A stretch of 63,513 nucleotides of DNA, the filler included, from Platydemus manokwari (Eukaryota), in the NCBI GenBank assembly GCA_037951405.1. It is 5 parts of 5 records of this genome, joined end to end, with 100 filler letters (N's around TTAATTAATTAA, not from the genome) between each part and the next. Parts side by side here need not be neighbours in the genome. Positions count along the whole stretch, not along the records: positions 17,379 to 28,093 come from JBBMOY011110775.1; 4 more parts are not named here. One strand, 5' to 3'. Below, piece after piece: positions 20,879 to 21,880 of this stretch. The notes below the pieces were generated by a model that made no database searches, was not told the DNA's origin, and saw only the letters and a list, made by a program, of their open reading frames with translations. Every line of letters starts with the position of its first letter. Position 1 is the stretch's first letter. A program made the translations under genes and the position numbers.

Positions 20879-21880
20879 TTAATCAGATAATTCGCATTCT
20901 TCTTCTACTTCCCTCATCATATCTCTTAACATTATTTCATATTCGGTCTCCTTAAGTTTTGGACATTTACCTTTTTTAGTAGTTTTTTTGGGTTTGGGTT
21001 CTTTTTTACATGGTTTTGTGCTACCACTAGTTGTGGGACATTCAACCATAGATGATTGTGCATTACGTCTGGTAGATCGTCGTAGAGGACATTGTTCTGC
21101 ATCAGCTTTTGTGGCACCCCTAGCTGTGGGACATCGTAACGGACATTGTTCCACATCATCTTCCACTACAGGAGGATCTGGTAGTTCAATTGTAATTCTA
21201 TCCGTAGGAATTGTTTTGATTGTAGAAAATCTCTCATCGAAAATATCGCCAGTATAAATAGCTTCTTTCGGTTTTGGGACAATTCCAACAATCTCTTTTA
21301 GTCGACCATTTATCCATACTTTTCTTCTATAAGGAACATCATATTCAAATGTGAATGGTTCTTCTGTCATCTCATTTGGGCATACATCATTTGTAAGAGA
21401 ATCTGGAATATCATAATTTCTTTCATCTTCATCTTGCATAGTCGAAGATCCAGGACGATCAAAGAAAGATCTTGTTCTTGATGCTCCGGTTGATCGTAAA
21501 TTCGTTCTAGTGCCTAGTGGACACACATCGTCATCTTCCTCTTGAAGAAGAGGAAATGGTTCTGCGCCATGTCTCGATTGACGTCTTGGAATAGCTTCAA
21601 GTGGTAAAGCACTTGCACCTGACTCTTGAATTATCGGCTGTGTTTCTGCTGATGTATATGGACAGACAGCAGGTTTTCCACAAGCTGGTCTTCTTCTTTT
21701 GTTAACTCGTGTTTGGTTCATAATTCGCTGTTTATTCCTTAGCCAACCGGCAAGAAGCTTTACTGGAACTTTCATTGCAACAGCAACTTCAAATGTTGAC
21801 TTTCCAGTATTTTTCAATCGGATACATGCCTTTTTAGTTTCCAGATCATAATCATCAATTATTTTATCATCACCTGCCAT
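20879..21880 (-). CDS. orphan protein (333 aa from ATG): N-terminal psq/CENP-B-N-type HTH, NLS-like KRRRP, 8 Cys-Pro motifs, acidic C-terminus
   Basis: 1-kb uninterrupted ORF in very AT-rich DNA. YDLETKKACIRLKNTGKSTFEVAVAMKVPVKLLAGWLRNKQRI fits the psq-type HTH pattern. A TTTAG acceptor lies just upstream of the ATG (about 21896). Confidence 0.8.
   Translation of the reverse strand: MAGDDKIIDDYDLETKKACIRLKNTGKSTFEVAVAMKVPVKLLAGWLRNKQRIMNQTRVNKRRRPACGKPAVCPYTSAETQPIIQESGASALPLEAIPRRQSRHGAEPFPLLQEEDDDVCPLGTRTNLRSTGASRTRSFFDRPGSSTMQDEDERNYDIPDSLTNDVCPNEMTEEPFTFEYDVPYRRKVWINGRLKEIVGIVPKPKEAIYTGDIFDERFSTIKTIPTDRITIELPDPPVVEDDVEQCPLRCPTARGATKADAEQCPLRRSTRRNAQSSMVECPTTSGSTKPCKKEPKPKKTTKKGKCPKLKETEYEIMLRDMMREVEEECELSD

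What the first reader, a model, noticed from the sequence alone, without database searches (positions are those of the whole stretch)
20879..21880. Orphan psq/CENP-B-type HTH protein in which 8 of 12 cysteines are Cys-Pro motifs
Seen: an N-terminal HTH, a basic KRRRP, and CP motifs (AVCPY, DVCPL, DVCPN, EQCPL x2, RCPT, ECPT, KCPK) in a disordered-looking tail that includes an 18-aa internal duplication. There is no DDE domain. Established: CP dipeptides are heme-regulatory motifs in transcription factors such as Bach1 and yeast Hap1, and psq/CENP-B-N HTHs are shared with pogo transposases. Inference: a transposon-derived DNA-binding domain fused to a heme/redox-sensing tail, i.e. a possible new heme-responsive regulator. 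The alternative is a Cys/Pro-rich germline protein.
Basis: partly seen in the sequence, partly recalled or inferred. Interest (0 to 1): 0.7.

Follow-up and report, generated by a model that had tools for sequence, protein, structure and literature searches.

The report
Rare HTH protein with Cys-Pro-rich tail
This is a real, single-copy, intronless gene for a small DNA-binding protein from a very rare family (three sequences found), and most of its Cys-Pro motifs are recent species-specific additions, so the heme-sensor idea is weak but not excluded.

Summary
The ORF is present as described: minus strand, 20879-21880, 333 aa, with 12 Cys of which 8 are followed by Pro. No shuffle out of 20000 reaches 8 CP. 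The protein is not a strict orphan. An exhaustive HMMER search of 1.84 billion proteins found two homologues of about 200 aa, from uncharacterised short contigs.

The three proteins share four features:
- an N-terminal three-helix HTH;
- a roughly 50-aa central block (PFxFEYDVPYRRK..G.LK..GIVPxPxE);
- one invariant Cys-Pro in a basic stretch;
- a C-terminal amphipathic helix (EYExML).

The HTH fold is supported. Its psq/CENP-B_N subtype has only consistent sub-threshold support.

Six of the eight CP motifs lie in window-specific disordered insertions, and four of those six come from one internal duplication. Only one CP is invariant across the family. Even so, the homologues also show a CP excess (3 of 6 Cys, p about 0.013).

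The ORF is single copy. It lies between inverted copies of a dispersed repeat. It has no DDE domain, and no RNA data could be found.

Best reading: a lineage-restricted nuclear DNA-binding adaptor or regulator. Heme or redox sensing remains a low-probability option.

The parts
20879..21880 (-). Complete single-exon coding sequence (333 aa plus stop) of the CP-rich HTH protein
   Evidence: ORF. The chance of 337 stop-free codons, given the stop frequency of the flanks, is 1.4e-11. GC at codon positions 1/2/3 is 0.51/0.46/0.19. The start and stop line up with both homologues.
21707..21865 (-). N-terminal three-helix HTH (residues 6-58), homeodomain-like fold, probably CENP-B_N/psq type
21689..21700 (-). 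Basic cluster KRRR (residues 61-64), NLS-like
   Evidence: Read from the sequence. The nuclear-localisation role is an inference.
21365..21688 (-). Disordered linker 1 (residues 65-172) carrying CP motifs at C73, C120 and C167. It is largely absent from the homologues.
   Evidence: pLDDT below 50. Alignments A3/A6 show gaps in the homologues. Only C120-P aligns with a CP, in L001.
21209..21364 (-). Conserved central block (residues 173-224), the signature of the family. It is predicted as a beta-hairpin and has no known family.
   Evidence: 50-54% identity with 23 invariant columns. It is the best phmmer stretch. AF2 strands at 182-190 and 193-201, pLDDT about 60. No Pfam hit. pN 0.31 against pS 0.80, which is saturated.
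20966..21208 (-). Window-specific disordered expansion (residues 225-305) with four CP motifs and a lysine-rich stretch
   Evidence: Gapped in both homologues. pLDDT below 50.
21011..21163 (-). Internal duplication. Unit 1 is EQCPLRCPTARGATKAD. Unit 2 is the same unit with a 13-aa insertion. Two ancestral CP motifs became four.
   Evidence: the repeat finder D5 (54-nt spacing, 83%) and D10 (86%). DNA alignment.
20960..20965 (-). Cys306-Pro307, the only CP invariant in all three family members. It sits in a basic stretch 7-16 residues before the C-terminal helix.
   Evidence: Alignment A8 has invariant columns C16 and P17.
20891..20944 (-). C-terminal amphipathic acidic helix (residues 313-330) with the conserved E-x-M-L motif and an LxxLL-like core
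   Evidence: AF2 helix 313-330, pLDDT 77-79. It is conserved in the homologues.
20852..20874 (-). Perfect 9-10 bp hairpin directly after the stop codon, a possible 3' UTR element
   Evidence: RNA fold dG -14.4 kcal/mol, z -4.5, 0 of 200 shuffles fold as well. It was also flagged by the terminator scan.
20424..20627 (.). Left copy of a dispersed high-copy repeat, inverted relative to the right copy
   Evidence: Inverted repeats I1/I2. Alignment at about 78% identity. Summed contig depth 737 against 13.6 for the unique ORF.
22790..22956 (.). Right copy of the same dispersed repeat, part of a longer repeated stretch (about 22573-23908)
   Evidence: Depth 374-1690.

Best explanation
The ORF is a genuine, single-copy, intronless gene for a small nuclear DNA-binding protein. 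It belongs to a very rare, undescribed family with three known sequences. The conserved architecture is an N-terminal homeodomain-like three-helix HTH (probably CENP-B_N/psq type), a basic cluster, a roughly 50-aa central block that probably forms a beta-hairpin module, a basic stretch with one invariant Cys-Pro, and a C-terminal amphipathic acidic helix with an LxxLL-like core.

The most likely mechanism is as follows. The HTH tethers the protein to DNA. The central block and the C-terminal helix recruit one or more partner proteins. That would make it a sequence-specific adaptor or transcription/chromatin regulator.

The window's species has lengthened the disordered linkers from about 200 to 333 aa. 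It did so by insertions and a tandem duplication, which is where most of the CP motifs come from.

Shown here: the gene is real, the family exists, the HTH fold is present, the conserved blocks are under constraint, the gene is single copy, and most CP motifs have a recent origin. Inferred: nuclear localisation, DNA binding, partner recruitment, and any role for the CP motifs.
For: Coding evidence:
- An ORF this long has a chance probability of 1.4e-11.
- GC at codon positions 1/2/3 is 0.51/0.46/0.19.
- GC is 37-40% in the ORF against 19-30% in the flanks.

Homologues:
- P0001 scores E 1.6e-25 and P0002 E 1.3e-16, out of 1.84 billion representatives.
- The full-length homologue ORF is L001:111-716.
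- Starts and stops coincide, and the conserved blocks are interrupted by variable linkers.

Constraint:
- pN is 0.31-0.39 against a saturated pS of 0.77-0.80 in the three conserved blocks.

HTH:
- AF2 models.
- hhalign probability 95.4, E 1.8e-8, against repeats that hit HTH_Tnp_1, HTH_23, HTH_28 and CENP-B_N.
- CENP-B_N scores E 0.11 in the homologue.
- The only PDB sequence hits are CENP-B and Dan.
- ESM feature neighbours are all CENP-B_N, BrkDBD or psq clusters.

Copy number:
- One contig covers 20177-22830 at depth 13.6, and nothing else lays on the ORF at 80% likeness or more.

CP origin:
-.
Against: - No transcript evidence exists. The only run that holds the locus is DNA.
- The window protein has no Pfam or NCBIfam hit.
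- The psq/CENP-B subtype rests on sub-threshold signals only.
- The central block is modelled with low confidence (pLDDT about 50-60) and has no identified fold or partner.
- The CP excess is highly non-random and is also seen in the homologues (3 of 6 Cys, p 0.013). This explanation leaves that excess without a function.
- The family has only three members, all from unknown or hidden organisms.
Confidence: 0.6

Rival explanations
1. This is the reader's hypothesis of a heme- or redox-responsive regulator. The CP dipeptides in the disordered tail would act as heme-regulatory motifs, as in BACH1/2 and Hap1. Thiolate ligation of heme, or oxidation, would alter DNA binding, partner binding or stability.
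For: - 8 of 12 Cys are CP, and all of them lie in regions predicted disordered.
- The excess is frame-specific at DNA level.
- The homologues also have a CP excess: 3 of 6 Cys, p 0.013.
- One CP is invariant next to the conserved C-terminal helix.
- CP motifs in flexible regions and IDRs are the commonest transient heme-binding motif (PMC10377097), and BACH2 binds heme in its IDR (PMC11699347).
- Short motifs in disordered regions can turn over in position while keeping their function.
Against: - 6 of the 8 CP motifs lie in insertions that both homologues lack, and 4 of those 6 come from one duplication.
- The homologues have only 1 and 2 CP motifs.
- The invariant CP is followed by K, A or C rather than the hydrophobic residue that, from general knowledge, is common in classical HRMs.
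- The whole protein has only one His.
- There is no biochemical or expression evidence.
- There is no similarity to any known heme-regulated protein.
Confidence: 0.08
2. The ORF is, or recently was, cargo of a mobile element. It would be the DNA-binding accessory protein or a remnant of a transposon bounded by the roughly 200-nt inverted repeats at 20424-20627 and 22790-22956. Its HTH would recognise that repeat family.
For: - Long inverted repeats of about 78% identity flank the ORF.
- These repeats belong to a high-copy dispersed family.
- This type of HTH is shared with transposases.
- The gene is intronless.
Against: - The ORF and 1.8 kb around it are single copy in the genome run.
- There is no DDE or other transposase catalytic domain.
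- The repeat ends show no TA duplication or clear terminal motif.
- The right arm is part of a longer, 1.3-kb repeated stretch. That fits two independent insertions of one repeat family.
- The conserved blocks show long-term purifying constraint across saturated synonymous divergence, which fits a host gene.
Confidence: 0.1
3. This is not a functional gene. It would be a chance or decaying ORF, for example a dead fragment of a pogo-like transposase.
For: - No RNA evidence.
- No curated family hit.
- About two thirds of the protein is predicted disordered.
Against: - The chance of such an ORF is 1.4e-11, and it shows strong codon-position GC asymmetry.
- Two distant homologues have the same start, stop and block structure.
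- pN is well below the saturated pS.
Confidence: 0.03

Closest known systems
CENP-B N-terminal / pipsqueak-type HTH proteins without a transposase domain (Drosophila Distal antenna Dan, PDB 2elh; CENP-B DBD, PDB 1bw6 and 1hlv; also Brinker and LCoR)
   Same: It has a single N-terminal three-helix HTH followed by long disordered sequence. The only PDB sequences the family profile touches are CENP-B and Dan, aligned in register over helices 2-3. CENP-B 1hlv, Dan 2elh and LCoR 2cob all appear in the Foldseek list. ESM feature neighbours are CENP-B_N, BrkDBD and psq clusters.
   Different: All of these signals are below significance (E about 0.1-1, no Pfam hit for the window protein). The central PFxFEYDVPYRRK block and the EYExML helix have no counterpart in those proteins as far as the searches show.
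pogo/Tigger-derived domesticated transposases (CENP-B, Jerky, TIGD)
   Same: The N-terminal HTH is possibly of the same type, and the gene is intronless.
   Different: There is no HTH_Tnp_Tc5 second HTH and no DDE_1 domain. The protein is a third to a half of their size. The gene is single copy.
Heme-regulatory-motif (Cys-Pro) transcription factors: BACH1/BACH2, yeast Hap1
   Same: It combines a DNA-binding domain with several CP dipeptides in an intrinsically disordered region (PMC11699347, PMC10377097).
   Different: The DNA-binding domain is unrelated (HTH rather than bZIP or a zinc cluster). There is no sequence similarity. Most CP motifs are not conserved in the homologues. Heme binding has not been tested.
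P0003, a metagenomic protein made of five tandem HTH_Tnp_1/HTH_23/CENP-B_N-type repeats
   Same: It is the nearest sequence relative of the HTH outside the family (phmmer E 1.3e-4; hhalign E 1.8e-8).
   Different: It consists only of HTH repeats. It shares neither the central block, nor the tail, nor any CP motif (0 of its 6 Cys are CP).

Membership tests
CENP-B_N / HTH_psq DNA-binding domain (Pfam PF04218 / PF05225) | Scores above the Pfam gathering threshold | tested here: not met
   The window protein has no Pfam family at E <= 1, and its N-terminal 60 aa have none at E <= 10. The homologue L001 ORF scores CENP-B_N at E 0.11, 12.5 bits against a cut-off of 21.2, with profile positions 12-52 of 53 in register.
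CENP-B_N / HTH_psq DNA-binding domain (Pfam PF04218 / PF05225) | Three-helix homeodomain-like HTH fold | tested here: met
CENP-B_N / HTH_psq DNA-binding domain (Pfam PF04218 / PF05225) | Specific sequence similarity to solved psq/CENP-B domains rather than to other HTH classes | tested here: inconclusive
   The family profile hits only 1bw6 (CENP-B) and 2elh (Dan) among 177,635 PDB sequences, but at E 0.91 and 0.93. The significant hhalign match (E 1.8e-8) is to repeats best classed as HTH_Tnp_1, which is in the same clan.
CENP-B_N / HTH_psq DNA-binding domain (Pfam PF04218 / PF05225) | Binds DNA | not testable with these tools
   This needs EMSA, PBM or DAP-seq.
pogo/Tigger-type transposase or its domesticated derivatives | DDE_1 catalytic domain and a second HTH (HTH_Tnp_Tc5) | tested here: not met
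   No such Pfam hits in the window protein or the homologues. All three proteins end shortly after the conserved C-terminal helix.
pogo/Tigger-type transposase or its domesticated derivatives | Multiple copies, or terminal inverted repeats with a TA target duplication | tested here: inconclusive
   The ORF is single copy at 80% nucleotide likeness or more. Inverted repeats do flank it. However, they are members of a dispersed high-copy family and show no clear TA-flanked termini.
Heme-regulatory-motif (CP-motif) proteins | Cys-Pro dipeptides exposed in flexible or disordered regions | tested here: met
   There are 8 CP motifs, all in segments with pLDDT below 50. The excess over chance has p about 1e-6.
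Heme-regulatory-motif (CP-motif) proteins | CP motifs conserved in relatives | tested here: not met
   One of 8 (C306-P307) is invariant, one more (C120) is shared with a single homologue, and 6 lie in window-specific insertions. As a caveat, the homologues still have 3 CP among their 6 Cys.
Heme-regulatory-motif (CP-motif) proteins | Reversible heme binding through the Cys thiolate (Soret band near 370 nm) with a functional consequence | not testable with these tools
   This is a biochemical assay. The spectral criterion is taken from PMC10377097.

The most novel reading that the evidence does not exclude
The family would be a new class of HTH regulators. In this reading, the invariant basic-context Cys-Pro next to the C-terminal partner-binding helix is a heme, metal or redox switch. 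The window's species would have amplified that switch to eight CP motifs by duplicating units in the disordered tail. The result would be an invertebrate analogue of BACH-type heme sensing, built on a CENP-B/psq-like DNA-binding domain.
Probability: 0.08. Interest if true: 0.7.

Novelty: new variant of a known kind. Interest (0 to 1): 0.3.

Why it matters
If the best explanation holds, this adds one small, undescribed family of HTH proteins, with a conserved central block that has no known fold or partner. That is useful for annotation, but it does not resolve any open question.

The finding would matter more if the Cys-Pro motifs proved functional. It would then be an independent invention of CP-based heme or redox sensing on a different DNA-binding scaffold. 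It would also give a natural example of motif number being amplified by duplication within a disordered region.

Tried and rejected
- **Word-index protein searches.** Searches with the whole protein, the family alignment and the N-terminal alignment gave nothing new.
- **Exact look-ups.** Neither the contig look-up nor the cluster look-up finds the window protein on record. Both homologues are singletons.
- **Scans for more family members.** The viral collection and the metagenome collection were scanned with back-translated family patterns and with a degenerate pattern for the FEYD[VI]PY[KR]RK motif. No further members were found.
- **Family and structure searches.** Pfam and NCBIfam gave no significant family. 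Foldseek against the PDB gave nothing at E <= 0.001 for either model. The ESM Atlas search by shape and by features for residues 165-333 gave no usable lead for the central block or the tail.
- **Other searches.** Rfam found nothing in the piece. The run search found only one DNA run, so expression could not be tested. A paper search for the two sample accessions found nothing.
- **Rejected: CP excess as a DNA-level motif or genome habit.** TGYCC is in frame 8 times out of 9 and absent from the antisense strand. The neighbouring 807-aa ORF has only 2 CP among 17 Cys.
- **Rejected: the contig joint at 20557/22842.** The 'opposite strands' joints are not evidence of a hairpin element. They only reflect repeat-family members that match one arm and then the other.
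- **Not pursued.** I did not try to identify the organism, which is coded by the tools. A possible chromo-like reading of the central block came from memory only and was left untested.

Full report
**Observation**

The piece (17379-28093) is AT-rich eukaryotic DNA, with 19-31% GC outside coding sequence. On the minus strand an uninterrupted ORF runs from the ATG at 21880 to the stop at 20879-20881 and encodes 333 aa. The ORF listing extends it to a GTG at 21892.

About 1.05 CP are expected, and none of 20000 residue shuffles reaches 8. Several further checks bear on this excess:
- Within the disordered parts alone, 8 of 10 Cys are CP against a Pro frequency of 0.12 (p 1.7e-6).
- After collapsing the duplicated units, 6 of 10 gives p 6.7e-5.
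- Cys is the only residue enriched before Pro.
- At DNA level TGYCC occurs 9 times on the sense strand of the ORF, 8 of them in frame, and never on the antisense strand. The rest of the piece has about 0.9 per kb per strand.
- The neighbouring 807-aa ORF has only 2 CP among 17 Cys.

The excess is therefore real, frame-specific and not a habit of this genome. The KRRRP cluster and the internal duplication are also real. No DDE domain or any other Pfam domain is present.

**Is it a gene?**

Several lines of evidence say yes:
- Given the stop-codon frequency of the flanks (0.0715), 337 stop-free codons have a probability of 1.4e-11.
- GC at codon positions 1/2/3 is 0.51/0.46/0.19.
- The ORF stands out at 37-40% GC.
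- An exhaustive phmmer search of 1.84 billion representative proteins found two true homologues. They are P0001 (206 aa, E 1.6e-25) and P0002 (E 1.3e-16).

P0002 is a truncated gene call. The full ORF on its 905-nt contig is L001:111-716, 201 aa. Both homologues are singletons on short contigs of unknown origin.

The three proteins start and stop at equivalent positions and share three blocks separated by variable linkers. Between the window ORF and L001, synonymous sites in those blocks are saturated (pS 0.77-0.80), while pN is 0.31-0.39. That indicates old divergence under purifying constraint.

No RNA evidence could be obtained, because the only run that holds the locus is a DNA run.

**Architecture**

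1. *N-terminal HTH, residues 6-58.*
   - AF2 predicts three helices, with pLDDT 67-84 in the window protein and about 90 in the P0001 model.
   - Foldseek finds nothing significant. Its lists are filled with three-helix HTHs, including CENP-B 1hlv, Dan 2elh and LCoR 2cob.
   - The third phmmer hit, P0003 (E 1.3e-4), is made of five HTH repeats that score strongly for HTH_Tnp_1, HTH_23 and HTH_28, and also for CENP-B_N.
   - A profile-profile comparison of the family's N-terminus with those repeats gives probability 95.4%, E 1.8e-8.
   - For the psq/CENP-B_N subtype the evidence is consistent but sub-threshold. Pfam CENP-B_N scores E 0.11, in register, in the L001 ORF. The only two PDB sequences touched by the family profile are CENP-B and Drosophila Dan, both at E about 0.9. 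The ESM feature neighbours are CENP-B_N, BrkDBD and psq clusters, scoring 0.79, which counts as a lead only.
2. *Basic cluster.* KRRR lies directly after the HTH.
3. *Disordered linker.* It is about 108 aa long in the window protein and far shorter (about 45-60 aa) in the homologues.
4. *Central block, residues 173-224.* This is the most conserved part of the family (50-54% identity, 23 invariant columns). It is predicted as a beta-hairpin with low confidence. It has no Pfam, PDB or Atlas relative.
5. *Second disordered stretch.* It is about 80 aa long in the window protein and is reduced to 10-25 aa in the homologues.
6. *Invariant Cys-Pro.* It sits in a basic stretch, 7-16 residues before the C-terminal helix.
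7. *C-terminal amphipathic acidic helix.* It carries the invariant E-x-M-L and an LxxLL-like core (MLRDMM / MLKGLL / MLLEIL).

**The CP motifs**

Only C306-P307 is invariant in all three proteins. C120-P aligns with a CP in L001 only. The other six lie in sequence that both homologues lack.

Four of those six come from one duplication. The unit EQCPLRCPTARGATKAD was copied, and the second copy then acquired a 13-aa insertion.

Two observations keep the idea alive:
- The homologues have 3 CP among their 6 Cys (p 0.013).
- One CP is invariant right next to a conserved helix.

CP motifs in flexible regions are the commonest transient heme-binding motif (PMC10377097), and BACH2 binds heme in its disordered region (PMC11699347). 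However, CP alone is not diagnostic. The invariant CP here is followed by K, A or C rather than a hydrophobic residue. The protein has a single His.

**Genomic context**

Laying the contigs of the one available DNA run at 80% likeness or more shows that the ORF and about 1.8 kb around it are single copy. One contig covers 20177-22830 at depth 13.6. The sequences on both sides are highly repeated.

The ORF is flanked by inverted copies of one dispersed repeat, at 20424-20627 and 22790-22956, about 78% identical with one 31-nt indel. Three points bear on how to read this:
- The right copy is part of a longer repeated stretch.
- The ends show no TA-flanked termini.
- The ORF itself is unique.

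Two independent insertions of one repeat family is the simpler reading. A composite or ancient mobile element is not excluded.

All three ORFs in the piece lie on the minus strand: the 807-aa repeat protein, this gene, and the first exon of an ANF_receptor/class-C GPCR-like gene.

**Verdict**

'Transposon-derived' is unproven. The heme-sensor inference is weakened but not excluded (about 8%).

The best explanation, at about 60%, is a lineage-restricted nuclear DNA-binding adaptor or regulator. Its HTH would tether it to DNA, and its conserved central block and C-terminal helix would recruit partners. Its disordered linkers have been expanded in this species by insertion and duplication.

It is a new variant of a known kind: an HTH regulator with an undescribed conserved module. 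Interest is modest.

Noticed in passing
window 25190-27613 (-): An 807-aa intronless ORF with no Pfam hit. It has eight 29-aa (87-nt) tandem repeats with the core KPKRQYTRKPK, and three C-terminal units of the form 'DLSxLRDDLxLTDTETE'.
   Followed up: no
window 19567-20067: A dispersed repeat of extremely high copy number in the genome run. Summed contig depth is 5,600-23,000 against 13.6 for unique DNA, with many internal-deletion variants.
   Followed up: no
window 18607-19161 (-): The first coding exon (signal peptide plus the start of an ANF_receptor ligand-binding domain, E 4e-7) of a class-C GPCR-like gene. The ORF reads through an apparent CAG|GTAAAT splice donor.
   Followed up: partly
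window 20852-20874: A perfect 9-10 bp GC-containing hairpin three bases after the stop codon of the CP-rich ORF. RNA dG is -14.4 kcal/mol, z is -4.5, and 0 of 200 shuffles fold as well. It may be a 3' UTR element. No equivalent is obvious in the homologue contig L001.
   Followed up: partly
window 20424-20627 and 22790-22956: Inverted copies, about 78% identical, of a high-copy dispersed repeat bracket the unique 1.8-kb island that holds the ORF.
   Followed up: partly
window 19400-19566 and 20068-20234: Unique-looking contigs here have depth of about 5, against about 13 for neighbouring unique DNA. This may be a haplotype-specific or heterozygous segment.
   Followed up: no
window 20891-20944 (-); P0001:191-205; L001:672-713: The C-terminal helix of all three family members carries an LxxLL-like core (MLRDMM / MLKGLL / MLLEIL). 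It is reminiscent of co-regulator interaction motifs.
   Followed up: no
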